In this document: positions 1 to 27,901 of the stretch, piece by piece | Numbering within the stretch: the stretch's first letter is position 1 | Layout: the number at the start of each line of letters is the position of its first letter | NCBI RefSeq assembly: GCF_964204645.1 | Contig: NC_134032.1 | Coordinates: forward strand, 12,822,275 to 12,886,274 | Source of the DNA: Tubulanus polymorphus | Taxonomy: Eukaryota > Animalia > Nemertea | Direction of reading: 5' to 3' | DNA length: 64,000 bases | The notes under the pieces: model-generated | What the model saw: only the letters and a program-made list of their open reading frames with translations | What the model was told of the DNA's origin: nothing | Database searches by the model: none | Translations under genes and position numbers: made by a program

Positions 1-2159
1 GTGTTGGCGCTACCACCGCGGGTGTCACGGGCGGCGTCACCGGCTGAGTTTCGACCGGTTTCATCGGCTCTGACTGAGGTTGCGGCTCAGCCGGCGCTGG
101 AGTGGGTGACTTCGTCGGAGTTTCCTCCGATGCCTCGTAGTTGGCGAACGCGGCGACGTCTGATTCATCATTGACGATGATACACAACAGCTGAAAAATA
201 AATTGCCCACGGGCAAAGTAGTTTACCTTGAACACTCGAGATGAGAAATCTCTTTAATGCCGAGTTCAAAGATCTATTTCATATTGCATTTTATCTTGAT
301 TAAGAATTATTATTTTGTAGTCAAATAAGGCCAAAAATATACATTTTATTTGTCAACGGTTCAGCAGAATTTTGGTTTAAATATTTCCACAAACATCACA
401 TGCTGCAGAAAGGGATGGATGAAAAGTGAGCTCAATAGCTAGCTGGGATTATTATCCCGAATAGGCTAAATAGTCGATTCGATGTTGATTAAAATGTAGC
501 AGAAATTCAAGCCCAGAACACGGGGCCTCACAAGCGGAATTCTCGCTTGCAGTAAGTGGAATCCTCTATTGGCGCAGAAGTTTGGTGTCCTACTACACAC
601 TAGCGACACCTGGTAGATTCAAGTGGAATCTTCTATTGCTGCTGCAGTTGATGACATACTGCACATCAGCACCTGGTGAATCCTCTATTGCCAGATGATG
701 TCCTACTGTACACTAGCGACACCTGGTGGAACTTCACTTGCCACAGTAGTTAGTATTGTCATACAGTGTTTTATATTACCTTGCCAATCGGAATATCTTT
801 CGTACCAGCGGCGACTAATACTTTTGCTAAAAAGCCTTCTTCGGGCGTTTCAAATCCCATTGTTGCTTTATCCGTTTCGATCTCCGCCAGTAAGTCACCT
901 TCTGAAAGCTGATCGCCCTCCTTCTTCTCCCAGCTAATGATCGTTCCCAATTCCATAGTTGGCGAAAGCGCGGGTAGCGTAATTTTGAAGTGGTCCGGTA
1001 AACTGCCATCTGAGTTAATAAATACAAAAAAATCATGTAAAAGTACACGTAGCCTGCAAATCATTAGAGTTATCAATCGGCAGCTTGGACCCCGATCCTT
1101 CAAATATTCAATACTTCATCAATATTCAATTTGTGACTGGACTTCACACATGTGTTCAGGACTTCACTCAAAACATTTTTAATGGTAAATGAACTACAAA
1201 CACCAGACCTTAGGCATTAAATGTCTAATGTCTGGTGCACCGGTACGTTCAAAACATGTGAAGTTCAAAACATGTGAAGTGTGGAGTGCGGATTGTCTGA
1301 AGCCGTGGTTCCAGGCTGCAGATAGCTGTGGTGGAATGTCTGAAGGGGTGCAGGTGTTAAATGTCTGATGTCTGGTGCACCGGTATGTTCAAAACATGTG
1401 AAGTGTGGAGTGCGGATCGTCTGAAGCTGTGGTTCAGCTGCGGATAGCTGTGGAATGTCTGAAGGGGAGGTTCCAAGGGGCCGATTGATTGTCTGAAGGG
1501 GTGCAGGTTCCAAGCTGCAGAATGTCTGAAGGATTGGTTCCACGCTACACGTTGATACCTGTTATTAGATTATTTTCTATTTTCAGTGTAATCTTGATTG
1601 ATACTTACTTGAATAATTTCTAGTAATTGTAAACCTATTGACGTTGAAATCACTTGTGTAAGCAGCCTTGGATTTTTTACAACAAACAGTGTACGGCCTG
1701 AAAATGCAATAAGAATAAAAATTTATAATTAGGCTGATGTCGAACAAAACCTGTGTTGAAATCCGTGGATTGTGCAGGGGGTAGGCCTACACCTAGGCTC
1801 TGAATTTCAGAGTAAAAGAAGGGTCAATTGTGTGGGCCAACTGGTCAAGGTCAGCCAGAGAATGGACATTGATTGAACATAGGTAATTTCATGGTTAACT
1901 AATCACACCAATTTATGAAGAACAGGGCAATTGCTGGGACAGATCTTTGATTTTGGATCCCAAGTTTTTCGTGACAGGCCCCTGGTGGTGGTGGTGACTG
2001 ATAGTGAACGAAGTCTTACCGGCTGAGGAAAGTTGTTCGTGCAGTCGCCGCCGCTGCGGGTGAAATAAACCGAGCAGGAACGAGATATCTCAATCCTCGC
2101 TGCATCACGTATTTCTGCAGCGTCAGATTATCTCGCAGAAAAACTACTGGACGATACAT
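1..2159 (-). CDS. DLAT: Dihydrolipoyllysine acetyltransferase (pyruvate dehydrogenase E2), 5' part; runs off the left edge
   Basis: Exons 2020-2159, 1609-1697, 780-1009 and <1-190 join in frame through GT-AG introns. They give a basic transit-peptide-like N-terminus ([10 protein letters not shown]...), a lipoyl domain ([13 protein letters not shown]...[25 protein letters not shown]...IPIGKLLCIIV) and a Pro/Ala/Thr-rich linker. Confidence 0.92.
555..730. repeat. Degenerate short tandem repeat in a DLAT intron
   Basis: About 3 copies of gtggaatcctctattg...ctacac..gcgacacctggt. Confidence 0.6.
1218..1540. repeat. Degenerate tandem repeats in a DLAT intron
   Basis: Duplicated ttaaatgtct..tgtctggtgcaccggta..ttcaaaacatgtgaagtgtggagtgcgg block plus repeated tgtctgaagggg units. 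Confidence 0.65.
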
Positions 2160-10299: not shown

Positions 10300-12748
10300 G
10301 CAATACCACGGCTGGCCTGGATCCGCGCCGGCATTCTCATTCTCTTAGGATCGGCCCAATCGAATCACCATCGATTGATTCAGGTGATTAGTCGACACCG
10401 AAAGATCGATGACCGCGAAATTGATGGCGCATAATTGGGACCCGAAATCATTATACACACACGACGTACCCGTGCATGTACTAGTTTAAGGCTAAAGAAA
10501 ATTGATACATTGTTTCTCCTGATCGGACGGATCACTTTTATAAACCGCAATGAAATTTGTAATCAGTTCATTTCTATATAACTGCCGGGTCTGTTATTGT
10601 ACTTAGCCTGATCGTGATTTTAAAGAAAGTGATGTACGTGGTAGATAGGCGATCGGCCGCCGGGTCATCTTGGCAGAAATGATAAACAAGGTATGAACGC
10701 CTTCAGCCTTAAGTCGTAAATATTGAAATTCGTTATCCACCGCGTATTTACGTATAAACATTGTGTATACCTATTGTGAGGAATTTTCTCATTTGCTCCG
10801 ACCGCGCAGACTCTATATTCGTCTGCCAGCAGCCACACTTTCCTTATTACACTTCGACGTGTCGGAAGTTGTTTTCGCGCTGCAGTCGACCTCAAGGTAT
10901 GAATTTTCGATTTCCTCCCGATCGTTTTAAATTTCAAATATATAAGTTGCACTTCGTAATTAGGGTTAATAATGGCTAATGCATTGCGGATTAAACATGT
11001 CTTAATTTTCGAATGTCAATAGTTGAGCTAATAATGGCTAATGCATTGTAAATTAAATCTAAGTGCTCTGCAATTTTGTGTGAAAAATCTTAATGTTATC
11101 TTCAGTTGTCCTGTAGAGATTTATTGCAGGCTCTCGCCTACTTTTACCCGAGGTGAAATATTCAAAATGTTCATCCCGAGATTTGTTCGTGTGTTCGTAA
11201 TGAGTACATCACATTGATTCGCGATCGGATATTTTTTGCTCATCCGAGTTGATAGTGCTACATCGAGATAAATATCGAGATAAATATTGAGATAAATCGA
11301 GATGCGCTTTTTTCACGAGAACCGGACTTTTTGCTTTTTTTAGTAAAGGTGGTAAAATAAATTCGGGCGTTATTTTTTCATCTAGACGAAAACCGGAATT
11401 ATGCTAATAGTGCTTTTAATTTACGTGGTAAAAAGAATTAGGCCATATTCATTAGACGAGCCGTTCTTAAACAAGAAACGCAATTTTTGCTGTTGGTGCT
11501 TTTGCTTTTGGAAAAAGAAACCGGTCGTATTCGTTGAGAGTAGGTTCTTTTATCATTTATACGTAAGTTCCGCGGACACTTGCGCGTTAAGTATAGATCG
11601 GAAACTCCTCAAACTAAATGTATATTACCTGAGAACTGTGTAGCTCTGTAAACGCGTATTTTTCTAAGCGTCTGCAAACGAAGTTGCTAAAAATATACGT
11701 ACAACATAAGCTTACATAAGCGACGTTACTGGAATATAGCTACCAATAACTTGCGCATTATTTTTATATACATGTAACTCTAGCTTTACATCGATCGAGA
11801 ACCGTGTAGGAATTTTTTTTATCATTAACTGGGGTTAAGGTCATAGTTTTGAAGGCCACGCAGGCGCCAGTGCAGTTCTTTGATGATCGCCTTAAATCTA
11901 GTACTTAATTACATCCAATGAAAATATACATAGGGTAACATATAATCATATCATTGGAATAAGATAGATTGAAATCACTTTTCAAAATCATGCGTACATT
12001 AAGACAAATTTCAATTCTAAAAATATAATTACCTACATTTTATTCATTAAATCTACATGGATTTAGTTTAGTTTTTCAAGTTCCTAGAATAGAGAACCTA
12101 AGAATTTGATTGAGTAAATGACTGGCAAACCTGGGTTTAGGCCTACGTTATCATTCCAAAATAACGAAAGGAAGTAAGTTCTCAATGTTCGACCTGTGGT
12201 TGCGTCTGTTTGATGGTAACTACTCGTAAAGGTAGGTATCGATAGAGCTAAAACATCATTAATTACCTAACTTCACACATGATTAACGCACGATCGTAAA
12301 TATGGCCTCGATTCGTTTGCAATTATTAATCATAACTCTTGACTACGAGTCATTTGTATTTTGATATTTTGTCGTGTATTTTACCCTGTCTTGTCAGGAT
12401 CACTAGTCCCTCTAATTCAATGGCCAATTTTAGAAAAACAATCAACTCCTTCAAATCTGTTTGATATAAACGGAATCAACGAAGAAATCAAATCGATCGA
12501 AGAGTTTAAACCTTCTTCATAATCGCTGGTTCTGTGAATTCGTTTCGTTAGTTTGAATCCTGTTGGGCGACAGTGTTTCCCGGTCTTCCAAGGTTCTTTC
12601 TCGGCCTGTCATCTATCGATACGATAAAAAAGAAACCCCTTCTAACCTTCCCTAACAGACCGTTTAGATCTATCTGTGTTTACACAGTTAAGATGACTTT
12701 AGTAGTCGGTATAATGTAAGCTCGTTATCTTGTGCACAGGAGGTAGGC

Positions 12749-15700
12749 ATGAAGTGCATCGACACTATCGATGGAATGTACAGCATTTTAGAGAAATCTG
12801 ACTCGAAATCGTTGCTGAAAAAATATCTGACGCCGGATAAATTCAAAAAACTGAGATCCCTCAAAACTAAACTCGGCGGCACTTTGGCTCACTGCATCAA
12901 TTCAGGTTGGTTCTATTTTTGCATCGAGCTGTTCTACAGTAGACTTCGCTCAAGTCGAATCTTTTGGGACCGTAAAATGTGTCCGACTTGAGTGATATTC
13001 GAGTTGGGTGTTATGCATTCGTTAAATGGTGTCACAAAAGATTTTTCAAAAGACATTCGAGTTGATCTCTCATCAATAATTCTCTGTTCCGGGAGAAGAG
13101 ATTTCGTACCTTTAATGGTTATAGTTAAGTTGATATGAAGCACCATTGATATCTTGTCATTCATTTATGATTGGTCATTTACAGGTGTTGAACACTTGGA
13201 GAGCAGTAATGGCATTTATGCCTGTGATCCGGAAGGATATGAAACGTTCAAAGATATTCTGGACCCGATTATAAAAGAATATCACAAGTTCGAAAATTCT
13301 GATATCAAACATCCGGATCCGGATTTTGGAAACTTGGCAAACCTTCCATTTGGTGATGTTGACCCAGATGGTAGATATGTTGTTTCAACACGAGTTCGTG
13401 TTGGTCGTAGCGTCGACGGTATTCCATTCCCTCCAACAATCAATAAAGCGGTAAGTCCCGATATCCTTCGCATAGTATTGCAATGATACAAATGGTGTGA
13501 AATGTGTTATTAACTTTTTCGAAAGGTTTTGACTAAATGCCAAAGATCCTGTAAGCATTTGCAAAACGTGATATCCTTGGGATGAATACGTTGAAGATAT
13601 CGTATTGAGGAATAATTGGTAATCAAAAAGTATACTGATTATCTTTAATAGCAACGTGCTGAGGTTGAAAGGAAAATCATGAAAGCTTTCGACGTGCTTC
13701 AAAATGATAAGGAATATGAAGGTACCTATTACCAGTTGCCAAAACTGACTCCTCAGGAGGCTGACCAACTGAGGATGGATCATTTCCTATTCAGCGAAAC
13801 TGATGAGTAAGTAAATTATTTGTATGATACTGCATAGGCGGATTAAGCGATTTTATAAAAAATTGCATTCACGTTCCTTATGAAAAACTATTCAAAACCA
13901 GTTAACTAATAATACTTTCAGCATTGCTCGATCTGCTGGTATCTATCGAGATTGGAGTGACAGTCGTGGAATTTACTGCAGTAACGACAAAAAATTTCTT
14001 GTGTGGGTAAATGAAGAAGATCATTATCGTCTCATATCCATGCAGAAAGGAGGCGACCTCGCAAAGGTGTATCGTAGATTGGTGAAAGTAAGGAGTACTA
14101 CTTTTGTCTGTACTATTGCCGTTTATTCTTTAAACAACACTTAAAAAGGATTTTTTTTTCCAATTCCAGGCCATTAAAACAGTGGAGCAACAGGTTACGT
14201 TCGCACACAGTAAACGCTTTGGTTACCTAACTTTTTGTCCTACAAATCTCGGAACAACGTTAAGAGCCAGTGTACATGTGAAGATACCCAGGCTTTCAGC
14301 AAACAAGAAAATGATGGAGGAGATTTGCGCTGAATATAAACTTCAACCAAGAGGTAAATAGACTAGAAATAGGATAAGAGATAACATGTAAAGTGTGGGT
14401 TTCTCATGAAAAACAAAACTCTTATGTTCCCCGGCTTCATATATTTCACTAAGGTATACATGGTGAACATACTGAGAGCGTTGGAGGTGTTTATGACATA
14501 AGCAATAAACGCAGATTGGGACTGTCTGAAATTGATGCCGTCACAGAAATGGCTGACGGTGTTAAAGCCATCATCGCCAAGGAAAAAGAACTGGTAATTG
14601 TCACTTTAATGTCCCCGGTAGAAATCAAAATTATTTAATAGTTTCAAACGTTTGCTTATTTTCTACATTCACAGGAAAAGATATGGGAGTATCAAGGTAG
14701 CATAGAGGATATGTACACCGTGCTTGTAAATTCCAACTCAAAATCATTGTTGAAGAAATACCTGACGCGAGAGGTATTTGACAGTCTGAAAGACAAGAAA
14801 ACGAGTCTTGGTGGTACATTGGCCCATTGCATCAATTCAGGTAATTAGATTTGTAAGCAATGGACATGTATTAAGCGACCTTTATAATACTTTATCGTAG
14901 AATCTAGGTGTTATTTACTTGGAGGGCAGTAATTAGACTAGAGGCAGAACATTCGTCAATAATTCGAAGTGATGGACTTGCAAGCTTTATGTATACTCTT
15001 TCATAAATTCCAGGTATTGTTCACTTGGAGAGCAGTAACGGCATTTATGCCTGTGATCCGGAAGGATACGAAACGTTCAAAGATATTCTGTACCCAATCA
15101 TCAAAGAATATCACAAGTTCGAGAATTCTGACATCAAACATCCGGATCCGGATTTTGGGAACTTGGCAAACCTTCCATTTGGTGATGTTGACCCAGACGG
15201 CAGATATGTTGTTTCAACACGAGTTCGTGTTGGTCGCAGTGCAGACGGTATTCCATTTGCTCCGTCTATCAGTGAAACGGTAAGTCCTACAATTCTGAAA
15301 TGATGGTTCTATAGTATGTACATTGATTTAAGCGTATGTAATACATTTGAAATCAGATGAGATATTGTCAATTTCATTATTGTAGCAACGGGCCGAAGTT
15401 GAAAACAAGATCATGAAAGCCTTTGAAGTACTACAAAATGAAAAGGAATATCAAGGTACCTATTACCAGTTACCAAAACTGACTCCTGAGGAGGCTGACC
15501 AACTGAGGACGGACCATTTCCTCTTCAGTGAGACTGATGAGTAAGTAGATTTGTAATAACGATCAAAAACATTTCAAATTAGCAGATCTAAACAATTGTA
15601 TTGAAGATGCATTCCGATTCCTCATGGCAAATTACATTTATTCACATTCGAAAGCACTAATTAACAAATTTCACTTTTAGCATTGCTCGATCAGCTGGTA

Positions 15701-18700
15701 TCTACAGGAATTGGAGTGACAATCGTGGAATTTACTGTAGTAACGACAAAAAATTCCTCGTATGGGTAAATGAAGAAGATCATTATCGTCTCATATCCAT
15801 GCAGAAAGGAGGTGACCTCGCAAAGGTGTATCGCAGATTAGTGAAGGTGCGGTATCTAATTCCCCTTGAAATTTTAGTGTTAATTCTATTATCAACAATT
15901 ACGAAAATCTTATTTAATTTAAAGGCCATCAAAACAGTGGAACAACAGGTTACGTTCGCACACAGTAAACGCTTTGGTTACCTAACCTTTTGTCCTACAA
16001 ATCTCGGAACAACGTTAAGAGCCAGTGTACATGTGAAGATACCCAGGCTTTCAGCAAACAAGAAAATGATGGAGGAAATTTGCGCTGAATATAAACTTCA
16101 ACCAAGAGGTGAATAAATATACTAGAAATAGGCTAAGAAATGGCATGTTAAGTGTTGGTTTCTCGTGAAGAACAAAACTTAAATGTTTGCTGGTTTCATG
16201 TATTTAATTAGGTATACATGGTGAACATACTGAGAGCGTTGGAGGTGTTTATGACATTAGCAATAAACGCAGATTGGGACTGTCTGAAATTGATGCCGTC
16301 ACAGAAATGGCTGACGGTGTTAAAGCCATCATCGCCAAGGAAAAAGAACTGGTAATTGTCACTTTAATGTTCCCGGTAGAAATCAAAATTATTTTATTGG
16401 TTTCAAACGTTTGCTTATTTTCTACATTCACAGGAAAAGATATGGGAGTATCAAGGTAGCATAGAGGATATGTACACCGTGCTTGTAAATTCCAACTCGA
16501 AATCGTTGTTGAAGAAGTATCTGACGCGAGATGTATTTGACAGTCTGAAAGATAAGAAAACCAATCTTGGTGGTACATTGGCCCATTGCATCAATTCAGG
16601 TAACTAGATTTGAATCAGTTAGACTTGAAGTAGAACATTCATCAAGTTAGGGACATGTATTAAGCAAGCTTTAAACTCATAAATTCCAGGTATTGTTCAC
16701 TTGGAGAGCAGTAACGGCATTTATGCCTGTGATCCGGAAGGATATGAAACATTCAAAGGTATTCTGGATCCAATCATCAAAGAATATCACAAGTTCGAAA
16801 ATTCTGATATCAAACATCCGGATCCGAATTTTGGGAACTTGGCAAACCTTCCATTTGGTGATGTTGACCCAGATGGTAGATATGTTGTTTCAACACGAGT
16901 TCGTGTTGGTCGCAGTGCAGACGGTATTCCGTTTGCTCCGTCTATCAGTGAAACGGTAAGACTTAAATGGCGGCACTAATTGTATTTCCAATGATCTTAA
17001 AGCGTTTGGAATACATTTGAAGATGAGGAGCAATTGAGTTAATTCTATCATTATAGCAACGTGCTGAAGTTGAAAACAAAATCATGAAAGCCTTCGAAGT
17101 ACTACAAAATACTAATGAATACCAGGGTACCTATTACCAGTTACCAAAGCTGACTCCTCAAGAAGCTGACCAATTGAGGAATGATCATTTCCTCTTCAGT
17201 GAAACAGACGAGTAAGTGACATATTTGCATCATACCACATAAGCATCTAAAGATTTTGAATTGTACAAATTCCTTATGTCACGTGACGTTTATTCAGAAC
17301 TTTTTAACAAATCTTATGAAACCTTACTCTTAGCATTGCTCGATCAGCCGGTATCTACAGAAATTGGAGTGACAATCGTGGAATCTACTGTAGTAACGAC
17401 AAAAAATTCCTTGTGTGGGTAAATGAAGAAGATCACTATCGTCTCATATCCATGCAGAAAGGAGGTGATCTCGCAAAGGTGTATCGCAGATTAGTGAAGG
17501 TGCGGTATCTAATTATCTTTGGACTGCTACAGTTAATTTTGTTATCAACAATTATAAACTTCTCATTTCCTTTAAAGGCCATTAAAATAGTGGAACAACA
17601 GGTTACGTTCGCACACAGTAAACGCTTTGGTTACCTTACCTTTTGTCCTACAAATCTCGGAACAACGTTGAGAGCCAGTGTACACGTAAAGATACCAAGA
17701 CTATCAGCAAACAAGAAAATGATGCAGGAGGTTTGCGCTGAACACAAACTTCAACCGAGAGGTAAAAACACTTTCTTAGGCTAAGAAAGAACGAACGTGT
17801 GAAATGCAGACTGTTCATGTAGGACTAGCTGTTAATGTTCATTGGCTTCATTTATTTCATTAAGGTATACACGGCGAACATACTGAGAGCGTAGGCGGTG
17901 TTTATGATATTAGTAATAAACGCAGATTGGGACTTACCGAAATCGATGCTGTCACAGAAATGGCTGAAGGCGTCAAAGCCATCATCGCCAAGGAAAAAGA
18001 ACTGGTAATTTTGAATAAATATGTCGATATAAAACATGTTGAAGATTGTTTTTCTCATTTTGTATTTCGACTTTATAGGAAAAGATTTGGGAATATCAAG
18101 GAAGCATCGAAGATATGTACACAGTACTAACAGAATCTAACTCGAAATCGTTGCTGAAGAAATACCTGACGCGTGAAGTATTTGAGAGTTTGAAAGATAA
18201 GAAAACCTCACTTGGTGGCACATTGGCGCATTGCATCAATTCAGGTACATATCCATCATAAAAGGAAAAGGAAATGTTTCAAAGTCGTGGGAACTTATTC
18301 ATATTAGATCTTTCCTAATATCTGGTTTATCAATTTTAGGGGTCGTTCACTTGGAGAGCAGTAATGGTATCTATGCCTGTGATCCGGAAGGATACGAAAC
18401 GTTCAAAGATATTCTGGACCCAATCATCAAAGAATATCACAAGTTCGAGAATTCTGACATCAAACATCCGGATCCGAATTTTGGAAACTTGGCAAACCTT
18501 CCATTTGGTGATGTTGACCCAGACGGTAGATATGTTGTTTCAACACGAGTTCGTGTTGGTCGCAGTGCAGACGGTATTCCATTTGCTCCGTCTATCAGTG
18601 AAACGGTAAGTCCTGTTAATCATTAATGATGGTACTACATTATAAATGTTGTTGAAAGCGTATACAATAATTTTGAAATTCAATGAATTATCATATAGTC

Positions 18701-21700
18701 AATCGATATTATTGTAGCAACGCGCTGAAGTTGAAAACAAAATTATGAAAGCCTTCGAATCACTTCAAAGTGATAGCGAATACGAGGGTACCTATTACCA
18801 GTTGCCAAATCTAACTTCTCAAGAGGCTGACCAATTGAGAATGGATCATTTCCTATTCAGCGAAACAGATGAGTGAGTAAATGATGTTTGCATTCTACCA
18901 AAATACTTCTTGAAGATCTTGAAGATTTTGATTGAAAATTGGTTATTATGTCACATGACGCTTATTCAAAATTCGTCAACATATCATACTTTCAGCATTG
19001 CTCGATCCGCTGGTATCTACAGGAATTGGAGTAACAATCGTGGAATTTACTGCAGCAACGACAAAAAATTCCTTGTATGGGTAAATGAAGAAGATCATTA
19101 TCGTCTCATATCCATGCAAAAAGGTGGTGACCTCGCCCAAGTGTATCGCAGACTAGTGAAAGTATGTATGGTATCTAATTCTTCTTGAACCACATGCTAC
19201 TCCTTGTATAACCACCAATTAATCAATATCTATTTTTGTTTTACTTCAAGGCCATCAAAACTGTGGAGCAAAAGGTTAAGTTCGCGCACAGTAAACGCTT
19301 TGGTTATCTTACCTTTTGTCCCACGAATCTTGGAACAACGTTAAGAGCCAGTGTACACGTAAAGATACCAAGGCTCTCAGCAAACAAGAAATTGATGGGG
19401 GAAGTTTGCGCTAGATTCAAACTTCAGCCGAGAGGTAAATAAGTTATCGTAGGCTAGGAGAGTACACACTGTACACGATTTATTCAAGCCTTTCCTTTTG
19501 GGATTCAAGGAACTAGTTTCTGATTCATGCTCCATATACTTTACTAAGGTATACACGGTGAACATACCGAGAGCGTGGGAGGTGTTTACGACATAAGTAA
19601 TAAACGTAGATTGGGACTGACCGAAATTGATGCTGTCACGGAAATGGCTGAAGGTGTTAAAGCCATCATTGCCAAGGAAAAAGAACTGGTAATTGACGCA
19701 GAAAATGTCGATAGAAATCTGAATAAATGGTTTTCTTTTTTTTCCCTGCTTCCTATCCCATTTCCCTATCTCATCGATATTTTAAAGCATCCTGGATTTT
19801 TACACATTTATAGGAGAAGATTTGGGAGTATCAAGGTAGCATTGAAGATATGTACACCGTGCTTACGGAATCCAACTCGAAATCGTTGCTGAAGAAATAT
19901 CTGACGCGTGAAGTATTTGAGAGTTTGAAAGATAAGAAAACCTCACTTGGTGGCACATTGGCACATTGCATCAATTCAGGTACATATTCATTATAAAAAG
20001 CAGTAGGAAATGTTTCGTAGGTTCGTACAACATCTATCCCAATATTTCGTTCATCAATTTTAGGTGTTGTTCACTTGGAGAGCAGTAATGGCATTTATGC
20101 CTGTGATCCGGAAGGATATGAAACATTCAAAGATATTCTGGATCCAATTATCAAAGAATATCACAAGTTCGAGAATTCTGATATCAAACATCCATCTACC
20201 GATTTCGGAAACTTGGAAGCTCTTCCATTTGGTGATGTTGACCCAGACGGTAGATATGTTGTTTCAACACGAGTTCGTGTTGGTCGCAGTGCAGACGGTA
20301 TTCCATTTGCTCCGTCTATCAGTGAAACGGTAAGACTTGCTATTCTTTAACGGTGGATTTCATTACCATTGTGATGAAATACTGTATATTGGAAGAATCA
20401 AATAAAATTTCAACGAGTCAATTTTATCATTGTAGCAACGCGCTGAAGTTGAAAACAAAATCATGAAAGCTTTCGAAGTACTTCAAACCGATAGTGAATA
20501 TCAAGGCACTTATTACCAGTTGCCAAAACTGACTCCTCAAGAGGCTGACCAATTAAGGATGGATCATTTCCTATTCAGTGAAACTGACGAGTAAGGAAAT
20601 TATTTGCATTTAACCGCTGACGCAAACTTATGATATTGATTGATGATCAATGCATGCACCCTATGACAACGTTTTTCACATTCTAATCCATTGCCACCCT
20701 TCACTTCCAGCATTGCTCGATCAGCCGGTATCTACAGGAATTGGAGTGACAATCGTGGAATTTACTGTAGTAACGACAAAAAATTCCTCGTATGGGTAAA
20801 TGAAGAAGATCACTATCGTCTCATATCCATGCAGAAAGGAGGTGACCTCGCCCAAGTGTATCGCAGATTAGTGAAAGTACGGATTATTTGAATCACTTCT
20901 GTTTATTTTATGACCAATTATTTATCAATGTTCAATATCATTTCACTTCAAGGCCATTAAAACAGTTGAGCAACAGGTTACGTTCGCGCGCAGTGATCGC
21001 TTTGGTTACCTAACCTTTTGTCCAACGAATCTCGGAACAACGTTAAGAGCCAGTGTACATGTGAAGATACCCAGGCTTTCAGCAAACAAGAAAATGATGG
21101 CGGAAGTTTGTGCTGAATATAAACTTCAACCAAGGGGTAACTGAACTATCATAGGCTCAGAAAAAAATTTTAATTTTGGATTGTTTATGAAGAACTAGCT
21201 TCTCATTTTCCCTGGCTCTAATTCTTTTTTCACTAAGGTATACACGGCGAACATACTGAGAGCGTTGGAGGTGTTTATGACATAAGCAATAAACGCAGAT
21301 TGGGACTGTCTGAAATTGATGCCGTCACAGAAATGGCTGACGGTGTTAAAGCCATCATCGCCAAGGAAAAAGAACTGGTAATTGTAAATGAATGTATCAA
21401 GTGAAATGGAAAACTTTCAGTTGTTCAAATCATTCTGTTTTGTCATTCACAGGAAAAAATTTGGGAATATCAGGGCAGCATCGAAGATATGTACTGGGTG
21501 CTAACGGAATCCAACTCGAAATCATTGTTGAAGAAATACCTGACACGAGAAGTATTTGACAGTCTGAAAGATAAGAAAACATCGCTTGGTGGTACTTTGG
21601 CCCATTGTATCAATTCAGGTACATATTCATCATCAAAGTAGTAGGAAAGTCCTGGGCGTTCTTTCAAATCATCTTAATCTTTTGTTCATAAAATCTAGGA

Positions 21701-23088
21701 ATCGTTCACTTGGAAAGCAGTAATGGTATTTATGCCTGTGATCCAGAAGGATATGAAACGTTCAAAGGTATTCTGGACCCGATCATCAAAGAATATCACA
21801 AGTTCGAGAACTCTGAAATCAATCACCCGGATCCGGATTTCGGAAACTTGGAAGCTCTTCCATTTGGTGATGTAGACCCAGATGGTAGATATGTTGTTTC
21901 TACACGGGTTCGTGTTGGTCGCAGTGCAGATGGTATTCCTTTTGCTCCATCTATCAGTGAAACGGTAAGTCCTGCTTTTTTCAAACTGTGCCAGTTCATT
22001 ATCGATGTGATGCCATTCTGTCTAAGATCCTGTGAAATATCAATGTTATCATTGTAGCAACGCGCTGAAGTTGAAAGCAAAATCATGAAAGCCTTCGAAG
22101 TACTTCAAAGTGATAATGAATACCAGGGTACCTATTACCAGTTACCAAAACTGACTCCTCAAGAGGCTGACCAATTGAGGATGGATCATTTCCTCTTCAG
22201 CGAAACTGATGAGTAAGTAGAATTGTAATTAGGATCAAACATAGACATATTGCCAGATCTAAACAATCGGACTGTAGATGCATTCGGGGTCCTCATGGCA
22301 AATTACATTTATTCACATTCGAAAGCACTAATTAACAATTTACTTTCAGCATTGCTCGATCAGCCGGTATCTACAGGAATTGGAGTGACAATCGTGGAAT
22401 TTACTGTAGTAACGACAAAAAATTCCTCGTATGGGTAAATGAAGAAGATCACTATCGTCTCATATCCATGCAGAAAGGAGGTGACCTCGCCCAAGTGTAT
22501 CGCAGATTGGTGAAAGTACGGATTATTTGAATCACTTCTGTTTATTTTATGGCCAATTGTTTATCAATGTTCAATATCTTTCACTTCAAGGCCATCAAAA
22601 CAGTGGAACAACAGGTTACGTTCGCTCACAGTAAACGCTTTGGTTACCTAACCTTTTGTCCAACGAATCTCGGAACAACGTTAAGAGCCAGTGTACACGT
22701 CAAGATACCAAAGCTTTCAGCAAACAAGAAAATGATGAACGAACTTTGCGCAAAACATAAACTTCAACCAAGAGGTAAACCCTATATCCCTTTATCGGAG
22801 TTTTGGAGTCCAGACGTCACTACTTTCCTATCATGTCTTCGTGACTTTGAGCTCTTTATAACCTAGATGGTAATCGTAGGACTAGTTCTTAATTAAACTG
22901 TCATCATTTATTCGGTTTTAGGTATACACGGTGAACATACCGAGAGCGTAGGCGGTGTTTATGATATAAGTAATAAACGCAGATTGGGACTGACCGAAAT
23001 TGACGCTGTCACCGAAATGGCTGAAGGCGTGAAGGCCATCATCGACATGGAAAAGGAATTGGAAACAAAAGAGAGCAGCAAAAAGTAG
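12749..23088 (+). CDS. Six-domain contiguous phosphagen kinase (ATP:guanido phosphotransferase, arginine-kinase type), 36 coding exons, 6480 nt, 2159 aa
   Basis: Exons. D1: 12749-12905, 13185-13450, 13652-13806, 13922-14087, 14170-14353, 14454-14593. D2: 14675-14840, 15014-15279, 15386-15540, 15681-15846, 15925-16108, 16212-16351. D3: 16434-16599, 16690-16955, 17057-17211, 17334-17499, 17578-17761, 17865-18004. D4: 18079-18244, 18340-18605, 18718-18872, 18996-19161, 19251-19434, 19549-19688. D5: 19814-19979, 20064-20329, 20436-20590, 20711-20876, 20953-21136, 21238-21377. D6: 21453-21618, 21699-21964, 22058-22212, 22350-22515, 22591-22774, 22922-23088 (TAG). All introns are GT-AG and homologous exons have identical lengths. 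Each domain carries [41 protein letters not shown] and [15 protein letters not shown] at ~23469. Confidence 0.9.
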
Positions 23089-24385
23089 AAAATTGAATCG
23101 TTATGAAGCATTGCAGGGCTCGTCAGTTGTGTGTTGTGTAAGACAGTTTCAGCTATATCTGTATTTACATGGGCGGCCAATGCTTTTTCATTGTTGATTT
23201 TGATGAGCCTTTCAAATCACATTTTGATTGCTGTTTGAGGGAATAGTTACAAATTAGTGTAATTGATTGTTAGTATTATACATGATTGTGTTTTTGCTTG
23301 TTAATTATCAATGTTGCTGGTTGGAACCAAATCCCTGACGTCCTTCTCTGTTTTCTATCATTTACATTCCAGTTTATATAAAAACTTTACCAAACTTATC
23401 GATATTAAATATATTTTGTGAATACTTTACTCCACAGTTCTGCGATGTATTCTGTAATTTTTTTTTCAAATAAAGAAAAATATGAAAACAGTTTTGTAAG
23501 ACGGGCGCAAATGACACGCACCATTATTTTGTTCCTTTACTTTATGCAAATATATAGACTAATTGTTGAATCTGCATGTTTGTCCTTTTCTTAAAATAGC
23601 TCGTTTTTGAAATAACTATATTGTTTAAGGTCTCTCTACTGGACGCAAGTTCCGTAGATCGCGAAGCCACATTGATGCCAGCTTCCATATTCAAGATATG
23701 ATCAATACCCACTTTTCATGTGCAAAATATCAAATGAAAAATGTAATATTCCTTTCATCGCAGTAATTCAGGTAGGCTTTGAATCGCTGTTGGTCCGGTG
23801 ATTCGGTAAATTGGTAAAAATGCCGAAAAAACTGGGCCAATCTTTCCGCCTAAGGTACAGTGTGATATCGATCATAAGGGCGTCTGGTTTGTCAGGGCCT
23901 CGGCGTTAGGCCGCGAAAAACGGGCATCCACCTAGCTAAACACCACGTCGATTCATAGCTATTTTGCAAAATATGTTACTCTCCGAACGTGATTGCGGTG
24001 GTTGGTTGGTATCCGGTTAAGACTAAACGTTTGGGGATGGGGGTTAATTTCTTTGTTTGCGACAGAGCCGAGCTACTAAAAGTTGGGCTGGAAAACTTTT
24101 AATTAGGTCAGTCGGTTGCTATGCTAACCGCCCCACTTCCTGAATCGATTGGCAGCCGTGAAACGGTCTTCTTGGTAACGAACCGTCGTCGTTATCGTAT
24201 CCCATAGTTACTCTCGCCGGTTTCAACTGTCACTGTTGTTTTGATTTTCGAGAGTGAAGGAAAACAAGTTATAGTACGTGATCCCTCCTCTGAAATATTA
24301 TCATTTCAAGACATATTCTGAAGATCATTATATTGAAAACCTTTCGTTTGCTACATATTTCGTTGCAGATACGAACACAGCAATC

Positions 24386-27300
24386 ATGGACGTTGCCGGC
24401 CCAATCGATGATATGTACAAGACGCTCAAGGGCGCAAATTCGAAATCTTTGTTGGCTAAGTACTTGAAGGACGATGTATTTGCTAAGCTGAAGGACAAGA
24501 AAACAAAGCTCGGTGGTACATTGGCTCAATGCATCAACTCTGGTGAGTAATTTCACTACTATTATCTCAGCTACTTTGATCGTCTGAAATAAAATGAGGA
24601 CAAGTCGGTCCTTATTTAACTCTCACTGCTTGTTTGATAATCCTTTGAAGACTGGAGCTTTTATTTATATTGTATAGTGCCAATTCCTACGAAAAATATA
24701 ACGGTGGAATTCTCATTTGATTCTAAAATACTTTTAACTTTTACGTTTAAAATATCTAAAGTTACTGGAATTTTCGTTAAGTCAACATGAGGCGCTTAAC
24801 TGTGTAGCACCACCCATATCTACCAGATGGCGAGTGTGATTTTAACATATATTCAAAAGTGAGAGACAGCGACAGTTGAACAACTGTCAGTTCGGCGAAA
24901 TTCTAATAGACGGCGTACATATCAAGTCGCCGATCTGTCCATATCACTCGTTTGAACCTGCTATCTATCATCCAGCATCAGAAACACTCGGAATCAGTAT
25001 CAATTTCAACTGATCCGAAAACTTCGGAACTGGTAGTTCTGACAGTAACGGGAAAATTCCTGGGAATTGCGATGATATTTCCCGGTTTGATTTGAGAATG
25101 CGATATAAGTTTTCCTCAATAATTCGGGAAATATTTGAGAAATTTAGCATAGCGTATGCCCATTGCTTGCGAGTGCAACTTTCTTCAGCAATTTATCCTG
25201 CAAATTACCTTTATCAACCAGAAAGTAACAAAATAAAAATGGTGACGCTCCTGTTGTTTGATAGAATATATTCTTTAATTTTACGAAGGCTTCATTTCCA
25301 TTTGGGCAAAAAATCAAACATGAAATGTATTTGAGAAAACTTGAGACTTTTTTCGAATTCATGTATATAACTGTGGGACCAAAGAATCTCGATTAGTTTG
25401 GAATGAATTTATTATTCGCAGGTGTCGAACAATTGGACAGCGGTACCGGTATCTACGTTTGCGACCCCGAGGGCTACGAGGTGTTCAAGGATCTGCTCGA
25501 TCCCGTAGTTAAGGACTACCACAAATTCCCGATGGACAAAGAAATCAAGCATCCATCCCCCGACTTCGGAGATATTGAAAATTTGCCGTTCGGAAACGTC
25601 GATCCAGAAGGCAAATACGTCGTCTCGACGAGAGTTCGTGTTGGCCGCAGCGCGGAAGGATTCGCCTTCCCACCACTCATCAGCAGAGAAGTATGTTTCA
25701 CTTATTTCTAGATAAAACGTCTCTACAACTTTTTGGAATATCTAGCTATAGCCTAAGTTTTTGTCCTTCTGTCTGGGTTATGATGCTTGGGGTTGTTGCT
25801 CATAAAGTTAGTTAAAGATTACCGGCGGATAAATACCTTATAGTAACTATTGTCACAATAGTCAACTATATCCACTGGTTTCTTTTAACTCTCTCGTTAA
25901 AACTACTTTTGAGCAAACTGGCCCTTTGGTTAGAATGTACAGGGGTGATCCAAGATCTTCAATGGGGTCTCTGATCATTCAGTTGAGCTGTTCCGTTCGT
26001 CGTGAGTATTGTACAGGGGACTGGCTGTGGTTGTCGGTTCCTGCTCCAGAAAAGGGAATTTGCTAAAAAGAAATAGGGATTCATCCCGCTTAAAATTTTG
26101 ATTGATATATTTCAATTTTATTTGAATTTTGTATTCCTTGCAAACCCGCCACACTGGCCGGGATAGAAACTGGACCCGGTTCCACAGTTGTGAGTTAGGA
26201 TTTGACTCGAGAAAATTAACTGATCTTAACTCACAACACTGTGGAACCGGGTCCAGTTTCGTTCCCGACTGGATCCATGGGGTTCAATTTCAAAATCGGA
26301 AATCGGGTTAGTCAAGTCGCATGATCGATTGTTTATATTTTAATTTCAGGGACGAAAGGAAATCGAATCGAAAATCGTGAACGCATTCAAGAAATTGGGA
26401 AGCGATCAAGAATACGCAGGAAAGTACTATTCGCTGGAAACGATGAGCGAAGATGACAGAAAGAAACTCGTCGACGATCATTTCTTATTCAACGATTCGG
26501 ATAGGTAAACATACAGTCTGTTTCTGTCGGAAACGTGGGCATTTATAGTTCTCTATCATAATTATGAACATTGTTTAATTGCAGGTTCGCTAGATCAGCC
26601 GGCGTTTACAGAAATTGGCCCGAGGGTCGCGGTATTTACTGCAACAACTCCAAAACGTTTTTGGTGTGGGTAAACGAGGAAGATCACTACCGTATTATTT
26701 CAATGCAGCAAGGAGGTGATCTCGCCGCTGTTTTCAAGAGATTAGTCAAGGTCAGTTGGTGAATATTGAACGATATCTCAATATTTATAGCGCTTTAACA
26801 CTTTTCTGAAGCCCATACGTGTAATTATCGTCATCACCAGGGCCCAGTTTCACAAAAAATGTTTTACTCACATTTTTGGCGTCGTTGCTTATGGTTACTT
26901 CATATTTTCAATGAGGACAACAATTCAAACTTAACCGTTTTTGGGTTAAACTTTTTCGTGAAACTGGGCCCTGGCTCCAGTTCCACAGTTCCGAGTTAAG
27001 ATTTGAAATTAAAAATGAGTTAACTTTATCTCAAGAGTTATAACTCTAACTCATAACTGTGGAACTGGGTTTTGGGGTTGGTTTCATGAAAAAGTTTAAG
27101 CTTAAATCAGTAAAGGTTGAATTGTTGCCGTCATTGAAAACATTAAGTAACCACTGGCAATTACACCAAAAATTCTAGTTCAAACTTTTTCGTGAAACTG
27201 AACCCTGTAGTGTTTAATCACCATTAATAAAACATTTAATCCCCGTCCTGACGAGAATACAAATTGGGAACATTTTCTGAATTGATATTAATTTTTCGTT

Positions 27301-27901
27301 ATCATTGCGTGGGATTCTCGTTGTTTTTTCTTCGATACGGAATAAGTTAAACTGTAAGACTTACAATTTTGCTCTATTTCGTTTCACAATGTAGGGCATC
27401 AAAACGATCGAAAGTGAGGTACCTTTCGCGCACAGCGACCGCCTCGGCTACGTGACCTTCTGTCCGACGAACCTGGGTACAACTCTCAGGGCGAGCGTAC
27501 ACGTCAAAGTGCCTAAACTTGCCGCCGATACTGAATTATTCCATGGAATCTGTGACCAGTACAAACTCCAACCAAGAGGTACGTCGCATTTCACCCCCTG
27601 CCCCCCGCTAGATACGGATCTGGAAATCGTTCTTTTGTGAAATTTGGCCAGAAACTGATAGAATCGCTCTCATAAGGATACTCGGGTCTGGACACATTCA
27701 CGCGTTGATCAAATGAAACATATTTAACTAAATTCCATTGACGATTTTGTTTTTGCAGGTATCCACGGTGAACATACCGAGAGCGTGGGAGGTGTCTACG
27801 ATATCAGTAACAAACGCAGATTGGGTATCTCGGAGATCCAGGCTGTTTCGGAAATGGCTGAAGGTGTCAAAGCCATCATCGCCAAAGAGAAATCTTTGTA
27901 A
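24386..27901 (+). CDS. Single-domain arginine kinase, 357 aa
   Basis: Exons 24386-24542, 25422-25690, 26350-26504, 26585-26750, 27395-27578 and 27759-27901 (TAA). It has the same five intron positions as each domain of the upstream gene, the AK signature LDSGTGIY and FLFNDSDRF, plus NEEDH and [14 protein letters not shown] at ~28164. Confidence 0.92.
25789..25925. mobile_element. MITE-like element in AK intron 2
   Basis: Imperfect terminal inverted repeats ggggttgttgctcataaagttagtt / aactacttttgagcaaactggccc. Confidence 0.5.
26166..26260. mobile_element. MITE (family B) in AK intron 2
   Basis: Perfect 22-bp inverted repeat gaaactggacccggttccacag / ctgtggaaccgggtccagtttc. Related copies lie at ~26971-27069 and ~28409-28531. 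Confidence 0.7.
26837..27207. mobile_element. Compound of three abutting MITEs (A, B, inverted A) in AK intron 4
   Basis: A at 26837-26974 (ccagggcccagtttcac / gtgaaactgggccctgg), B at ~26971-27069, and A' at ~27074-27207 whose internal sequence is reverse-complementary to A. Confidence 0.65.

What the first reader, a model, noticed from the sequence alone, without database searches (positions are those of the whole stretch)
12749..23088. A six-domain phosphagen kinase encoded as one polypeptide
Seen: six complete kinase repeats of 6 exons each. Domains 1-5 have no stop codon; they end ...AKEKEL|gtaatt and a short phase-0 intron joins them to ag|[14 protein letters not shown].... Only D1 has an in-frame start Met and only D6 has a stop, giving 2159 aa (roughly 240-250 kDa). 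Catalytic motifs are intact in all six domains. Established: contiguous two-domain arginine/taurocyamine kinases (bivalves, sea anemone, trematodes), three-domain flagellar creatine kinase and a four-domain ciliate AK are known; I know of no characterised six-domain enzyme. Inference: it may be a covalent oligomer or anchored ATP buffer for flagella, cilia or muscle.
Basis: partly seen in the sequence, partly recalled or inferred. Interest (0 to 1): 0.9.

Follow-up and report, generated by a model that had tools for sequence, protein, structure and literature searches.

The report
Six-unit phosphagen kinase in ribbon worm
A ribbon worm gene strings six near-identical energy-buffering kinase units into one 245-kDa protein; the feature is real and spliced in RNA, but a sponge and a flatworm have separately evolved predicted six-unit versions, so it is a rare, unstudied variant of a known design.

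Summary
Observation confirmed. Window 12749-23088 holds 36 exons with 35 GT-AG introns, giving one open frame of 2159 aa (245 kDa) with six phosphagen-kinase domains. The domains are 85-96% identical, all catalytic motifs are intact, and dN/dS is 0.07-0.18. The genome is the nemertean Tubulanus polymorphus. A DNA run supports units D3-D6 at similar depth. A spliced (RNA) run shows the D4-D5 bridge exactly, plus exon-6 joins to D6 and to D2-type exon 1. D3-D4 was not seen, and no read spans all six units. The linker upstream of each internal Met varies only synonymously, so it is translated. Novelty is lower than claimed. RefSeq already predicts these domains in one (mis-fused) protein, and six-domain kinases are predicted in the sponge Dysidea avara (intronless ORF) and in Macrostomum. 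Trees indicate three independent origins. I found no characterised enzyme above three domains. This one arose from an ancestor shared with the adjacent single-domain gene, via a 5' acceptor and a donor at the old stop. It lacks a lipid-anchor signal, and the D62-R193 bridge is lost as in bivalve two-domain AKs; arginine is still the likeliest substrate. The scan has noted a three-domain kinase nearby, but this finding only on this DNA.

The parts
12749..14593 (+). Domain 1, six exons (12749-12905, 13185-13450, 13652-13806, 13922-14087, 14170-14353, 14454-14593), 356 aa; start ATG at 12749, with a splice acceptor 9 nt upstream (AG at 12738-12739), so an upstream first exon probably exists
14594..14674 (+). 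Bridge intron D1-D2 (81 nt, phase 0), 96% identical to bridge D2-D3
   Evidence: an RNA contig joins an exon-6 end to D2-type exon 1
14675..16351 (+). Domain 2, six exons, 359 aa
16352..16433 (+). Bridge intron D2-D3 (82 nt); RefSeq uses a different in-frame 49-nt intron here
   Evidence: its junction sequence is identical to D1-D2, so RNA cannot tell the two apart
16434..18004 (+). Domain 3, six exons, 359 aa
   Evidence: internal splices seen in RNA
18005..18078 (+). Bridge intron D3-D4 (74 nt)
   Evidence: not among the joints listed (5 joints were not shown)
18079..19688 (+). Domain 4, six exons, 359 aa
19689..19813 (+). Bridge intron D4-D5 (125 nt)
   Evidence: RNA contig with 113 and 118 nt on the two sides and 0 mismatches
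19814..21377 (+). Domain 5, six exons, 359 aa
21378..21452 (+). Bridge intron D5-D6 (75 nt)
   Evidence: an RNA contig joins 24 nt of an exon-6 end (same in D1, D2, D3, D5) to D6 exon 1
21453..23088 (+). Domain 6, six exons, 367 aa, ends in TAG; no CaaX
23469..23474 (+). First AATAAA after the stop; candidate poly(A) signal (inferred)
24386..27901 (+). Separate single-domain paralogue (357 aa, 66-67% identical) with the same five intron positions and the canonical D62/G64/R193 signature; the closest named relative of the array

Best explanation
A single gene encodes one polypeptide of six catalytically intact phosphagen kinase domains of the arginine-kinase (AK) cluster. Shown: the frame, the splice sites, purifying selection, and RNA splicing of at least one bridge exactly and two more in part. 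Inferred origin: a one-domain gene, sharing an ancestor with the neighbour at 24.4-27.9 kb, diverged quickly and was tandemly duplicated. A GT donor at the old stop position spliced in phase 0 to the next copy's 5' acceptor 9 nt before the start codon. The old UTR became EKI and the old start position now reads Trp. Further unequal crossing-over and gene conversion gave six homogenised units. Inferred function: each domain reversibly moves phosphate between ATP and a guanidino phosphagen, most likely arginine (about 60%; another guanidino compound about 30%). The protein would be a soluble, covalently linked six-site ATP buffer, with large size and neighbour contacts standing in for the lost D62-R193 salt bridge.
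For: One frame with 35 GT-AG introns. dN/dS 0.07-0.18 at dS 0.29-0.55. The 12 linker codons before the internal Met are identical in protein across D2-D6, with variation only at synonymous third positions. RNA bridge joints, with no loose ends listed for the RNA run. The acceptor lies 9 nt before the start-equivalent codon in all six units, and the donor GTAA sits where the paralogue has its TAA. The six domains form a clade (SH-aLRT 100) on a 0.32 stem, grouped with the paralogue and other close single-domain relatives. Nearest neighbours differ exon by exon, e.g. D5/D6 exon 4 differ at 1 nt with a 97% intron, and D1/D2 exon 6 at 1 nt. AlphaFold model of D4-D5: pLDDT 90, each half matches AK structures at TM about 0.92. 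GS-loop length is AK-like with S63, Y68 and Y89 kept; D62 and/or R193 are also lost in bivalve two-domain AKs (PMC6429109 ref. 161).
Against: Only contigs were available, so no molecule spans all six units. The D3-D4 bridge was not listed, and D1-D2 versus D2-D3 cannot be separated. The 5' end and D1 were not covered by the read test. Inter-domain geometry is not predicted (pTM 0.57; rmsd 10-19 A to solved two-domain kinases). D62E, V65N and R193D are unusual together, and D62/R193 mutants are weak in single-domain AK (PMC11492440). No activity or tissue data.
Confidence: 0.8

Rival explanations
1. The gene is expressed as a mix of shorter isoforms (exon-6 to exon-1 skipping between units, or termination in a bridge), with the six-domain form only one of them.
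For: Bridge donors and acceptors are nearly interchangeable (last 30 nt of exon 6 identical in D1, D2, D3, D5). One RNA joint maps equally as D2-D6 or D5-D6. AATAAA occurs in bridges D3-D4 and D4-D5. Unspliced bridges give stops.
Against: The one bridge with long unique flanks (D4-D5) is the adjacent join. AATAAA occurs at chance frequency in the window (87 found, 94 expected).
Confidence: 0.12
2. The protein is a six-domain kinase for a substrate other than arginine (taurocyamine, hypotaurocyamine or an unknown nemertean guanidine), while the neighbouring one-domain gene remains the arginine kinase. This is compatible with the one-polypeptide model and differs only in substrate.
For: All six domains share E62, S64, N65 and D193, against D62, G64, T65 and R193 in the paralogue. 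The stem branch is long. Trematode TK and sipunculan HTK arose from AK-cluster genes (PMC3836730; PMC6429109).
Against: It lacks the shortened GS loop of trematode TKs and keeps Y68. Grouping with Clonorchis TK is rejected (p-AU 0.005; group chosen after seeing the first tree). Bivalve two-domain AKs with D or P at 193 remain arginine kinases.
Confidence: 0.3
3. Six separate single-domain genes in an operon-like array, each starting at its internal Met and resolved by trans-splicing.
For: Each unit has an in-frame Met at codon 13, and 74-125 nt spacers resemble intercistronic lengths (general knowledge).
Against: Cis-spliced bridges in RNA. The codons upstream of the Met change only synonymously. 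No leader-like loose ends were listed for the RNA run.
Confidence: 0.03
4. Assembly artefact: fewer real copies.
For: Tandem arrays are error-prone. The best DNA run may be the assembly's own sample. An intron-2 joint in sample S2 suggests allelic variation.
Against: Units differ by 7-15% in exons and most introns by 20-40%. Unit-specific contigs occur at similar depth. An independent 2014 RNA run carries letters specific to D2, D4, D5 and D6.
Confidence: 0.03

Closest known systems
Contiguous two-domain taurocyamine kinases of trematodes (Schistosoma mansoni PDB 4WO8/4WOE; Clonorchis TK, PMC3836730)
   Same: AK-cluster domains fused head to tail through a bridge intron; best PDB match by sequence and by fold; D62-R193 pair absent
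   Different: Two divergent domains (about 50% identical) rather than six near-identical ones; shorter GS loop without Y68; a separate clade
Two-domain arginine kinases of bivalves (Spisula/Pseudocardium, Ensis, Calyptogena) and of the sea anemone Anthopleura (PDB 4RF6)
   Same: Duplication and fusion of an AK gene; bivalve forms also lack D62 and/or R193
   Different: Two domains; independent origin; in some clams only the second domain was reported active (PMC3018575), whereas all six here look intact
Three-domain flagellar creatine kinase (sea urchin, Chaetopterus, Lineus)
   Same: Contiguous multi-domain phosphagen kinase
   Different: CK cluster with the long GS loop; the Chaetopterus protein starts MG (myristoylation type), which is absent here
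Predicted six-domain AKs of Dysidea avara (XP_065916504.1) and Macrostomum lignano (A0A1I8I065, A0A1I8ILA6)
   Same: Six intact domains, 2136-2187 aa, domains 91-100% alike within a protein
   Different: Independent origins (one clade rejected); Dysidea is intronless and ends in a CaaX-like motif; both keep D62 and R193; uncharacterised, and the Macrostomum models (96-100% identical units) may be assembly-inflated
Nemertean three-domain 'taurocyamine kinase-like' proteins (Tubulanus XP_074655961-4, Lineus XP_064653124, XP_064652496)
   Different: The Tubulanus/Lineus orthologous trimer is old (each domain orthologous between species), mostly CaaX-ended, and not the source of the six-mer

Membership tests
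ATP:guanidino phosphotransferase (phosphagen kinase) family | N-terminal PF02807 plus catalytic PF00217 domain | tested here: met
   (D1 exons); all six domains align end to end
ATP:guanidino phosphotransferase (phosphagen kinase) family | Catalytic residues: R124/R126, NEED, R229, CP(T/S)N, R280, R309, E314/H315, R330 (Limulus numbering) | tested here: met
ATP:guanidino phosphotransferase (phosphagen kinase) family | AK/CK fold | tested here: met
   AlphaFold plus Foldseek, TM about 0.92 per domain
Contiguous multi-domain phosphagen kinases | Complete domains in one reading frame joined by a bridge intron that is spliced | tested here: met
   D4-D5 exact, two further joins partial, D3-D4 not seen
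Contiguous multi-domain phosphagen kinases | Full-length multi-domain protein detected | not testable with these tools
   needs long reads, western blot or mass spectrometry
Arginine kinase (EC 2.7.3.3) | Placement in the AK cluster, AK-length GS loop, S63, Y68, Y89 | tested here: met
Arginine kinase (EC 2.7.3.3) | D62-R193 salt bridge of typical AKs | tested here: not met
   E62 and D193 in all six; known exceptions exist among bivalve two-domain AKs
Arginine kinase (EC 2.7.3.3) | Phosphorylates L-arginine | not testable with these tools
   enzyme assay needed
Trematode-type taurocyamine kinase | Shortened GS loop lacking Y68; clade with flatworm TKs | tested here: not met
Flagellar creatine kinase | CK-cluster domains with the long GS loop and an N-terminal Gly for myristoylation | tested here: not met
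   the true 5' end is unverified

The most novel reading that the evidence does not exclude
The array is a lineage-specific neofunctionalised enzyme: a 245-kDa six-site kinase whose shared guanidino-site changes (D62E, V65N, R193D) serve a non-arginine, possibly undescribed nemertean phosphagen. Six would then be a size reached convergently in a sponge, a flatworm and a ribbon worm.
Probability: 0.2. Interest if true: 0.7.

Novelty: new variant of a known kind. Interest (0 to 1): 0.47.

Why it matters
Why phosphagen kinases repeatedly fuse into contiguous multimers is an open question. Studied cases have two or three domains. This gene doubles that number, keeps all six sites under purifying selection, and sits beside a single-domain relative with canonical residues. 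That gives a natural paired test of what fusion buys (cooperativity, retention by size, compensation for the lost salt bridge) and of whether the substrate changed. With the sponge and flatworm proteins it points to repeated, independent expansion to 4-6 domains that I could not find described. It also corrects a chimeric RefSeq model.

Tried and rejected
The joined spliced model was not sent to any search tool. It was built only inside scripts, for frame checks and local comparison. Database searches used single exons by reference, or stored public proteins and their parts (P0003, P0001, P0160). Rejected: (1) A seven- or eight-domain protein as in RefSeq XP_074656973.1. Its D6-to-paralogue join needs an AT-AC intron whose donor lacks the U12 consensus (consensus from my own knowledge), D6 and the paralogue each have their own stop and downstream AATAAA, and its first 124 aa come from a decayed copy about 38 kb before D1, across three other genes. 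(2) Descent from the Tubulanus three-domain kinase, or a common origin with the other six-domain proteins: both rejected by AU tests (quick LG+G4 trees on 44 rows, groups named after the first tree). (3) An N-terminal targeting exon: tblastn with relatives' extensions found nothing and the donor scan gave one unconvincing candidate. (4) Literature searches for five- or six-domain kinases and for nemertean phosphagen kinases found nothing relevant; the Schistosoma TK structure paper was not retrieved. (5) The bacterial promoter scan is irrelevant to this animal. The DNA between D1's start and 15.9 kb, and beyond 21.9 kb, was not read-tested (one call allowed).

Full report
Observation. Splicing 36 exons between 12749 and 23088 gives a 6480-nt frame of 2159 aa (245.1 kDa) with one stop. 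All 35 introns are GT-AG and each unit repeats the phase pattern 1,0,2,0,1 with a phase-0 bridge of 74-125 nt. D1's exons match Pfam PF02807 and PF00217. The domains are 85-96% identical in protein and 85-93% in DNA, and all nucleotide-binding and catalytic motifs are present in all six. Separate products were therefore a real alternative and had to be tested.

Source. The window matches Tubulanus polymorphus chromosome OZ123233.1 without mismatch over 37.9 kb. RefSeq XP_074656973.1 (2656 aa) contains the six domains. It also fuses on 124 aa of a decayed upstream copy and the downstream single-domain gene, the latter through an AT-AC join without a U12 donor. At D2-D3 it uses a different in-frame intron.

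Are the six copies real? Most introns of different units are only about 60-80% alike. In DNA run X1, contigs spanning unit-specific introns of D3-D6 lie with zero mismatches at depth 27-34; X1 may be the assembly's own sample. An independent 2014 run carries letters specific to D2, D4, D5 and D6. An artefact is unlikely.

One polypeptide? Run X3 is spliced at GT-AG introns and so is RNA, although its kind is not on record. It contains the D4-D5 bridge with 113 and 118 perfectly matching bases on the two sides. It also has an exon-6 end joined to D6 exon 1, and an exon-6 end joined to D2-type exon 1. The last 30 nt of exon 6 are identical in D1, D2, D3 and D5, so those two joins do not name their donor. 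D3-D4 was not among the listed joints. No loose ends suggesting a spliced leader were listed for X3 (two rows were hidden). Independently, the 12 linker codons upstream of the internal Met are invariant in protein across D2-D6 while varying at third positions, and pairwise dN/dS is 0.07-0.18. The linker is translated and all units are under purifying selection. Contigs cannot show a full-length transcript.

Origin. A single-domain paralogue at 24386-27901 has the same five intron positions and 66-67% identity. In a 120-row domain tree the six domains form one clade (SH-aLRT 100) on a long stem, grouped with that paralogue, close unnamed single-domain proteins and one Lineus three-domain protein (98). 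In all six units an acceptor lies 9 nt before the start-equivalent codon (ATG in D1, TGG in D2-D6). The bridge donor GTAA lies where the paralogue has its TAA. Nearest neighbours change from exon to exon (D5/D6 share exon 4 and its intron; D1/D2 share exons 5-6 and the bridge; D4/D5 share exon 1), as expected from unequal crossing-over and gene conversion. A 5'-truncated copy of the array's 3' end lies about 38 kb before D1. It has no stops in its exons but has lost Y68 and the HGEH loop.

Function. An AlphaFold model of D4-D5 folds each half as a standard AK (pLDDT 90; TM about 0.92 to AK structures), with the last helix of D4 running into a short linker. The relative orientation is undetermined (pTM 0.57; rmsd 10-19 A to the solved two-domain enzymes). 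At the guanidino site the loop is AK-length and keeps S63, Y68 and Y89, but has E62, S64, N65 and D193 where the paralogue has D62, G64, T65 and R193. The D62-R193 pair matters in single-domain AK (PMC11492440). It is also absent in bivalve two-domain AKs and trematode TKs (PMC6429109 ref. 161). So the change does not by itself show a new substrate; it may go with fusion. I put arginine at about 60% and another guanidine at about 30%. There is no N-terminal Gly and no CaaX, unlike the CaaX-like ends of the Dysidea six-domain and nemertean three-domain enzymes. 'Anchored' is therefore unsupported, though an unknown first exon could add a targeting peptide.

Comparison and novelty. The characterised contiguous kinases I could document have two domains (PMC3836730, PMC3018575). 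The three-domain flagellar CK is seen in database names and known to me. Databases hold predicted four- and five-domain proteins from several lineages and six-domain ones in Dysidea avara and Macrostomum lignano. The Dysidea gene is an uninterrupted 6411-nt ORF with 91-96% identical domains. The Macrostomum units are 96-100% identical and less trustworthy. A common origin of the six-domain proteins is rejected (p-AU about 1e-47), as is descent from the Tubulanus three-domain gene (quick trees, groups chosen after the first tree). I found no paper describing five- or six-domain enzymes in the open-access library, which omits most of this field's subscription journals.

Verdict. Real, expressed and probably a single 245-kDa protein. 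It is a new variant of a known kind, not unique, and uncharacterised. Interest 0.47.

Noticed in passing
L001 8605-10640 (about 26-28 kb before the window's start): 5'-truncated duplicate of the array's 3' end (part of a D5-like unit, a bridge, and a D6-like unit; 78% nt identity). Exons have no stops but key active-site residues are lost (Y68, HGEH loop); probably a decaying pseudogene.
   Followed up: partly
window 24386-27901: Single-domain phosphagen kinase paralogue with a canonical AK signature and its own stop and AATAAA; RefSeq wrongly fuses it to the six-domain gene.
   Followed up: yes
window 18614 / 20417: In sample S2 (runs X2 and X4, whose loose ends look like a Hi-C bridge adapter, from my own knowledge) a contig joins a D2/D4-type exon-2 end to the D5 intron-2 end. 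It may be a gene-converted or recombinant allele, or a D2 allele lying outside the laid stretch.
   Followed up: partly
L003 3001-9411 (Dysidea avara): Intronless six-domain arginine-kinase-type ORF ending in a CaaX-like motif; related five-domain sponge-like proteins occur in ENA assemblies. Apparently uncharacterised.
   Followed up: partly
P0182/P0289 (Tubulanus), P0001 (Lineus, L002 10001-20331): Orthologous three-domain kinases conserved between a palaeonemertean and a heteronemertean, ending in CaaX-like motifs; some isoforms have N-terminal extensions.
   Followed up: partly
window about 30600-64000: Large satellite of a 59-bp unit with higher-order periods (118, 138, 476 bp) and strong strand skew; it begins just after short exon/intron-like repeats at 30.0-30.9 kb.
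   Followed up: no
window 1-2159, minus strand: 5' part of a dihydrolipoamide acyltransferase (2-oxoacid dehydrogenase E2) gene with a lipoyl domain.
   Followed up: no
P0003, P0158 (Macrobrachium), P0014 and relatives (dinoflagellate and other protists), P0184 (foraminifer): Three- and four-domain phosphagen kinases in other lineages, some fused to ankyrin repeats; multi-domain expansion is far more widespread than the reviews I read state.
   Followed up: partly
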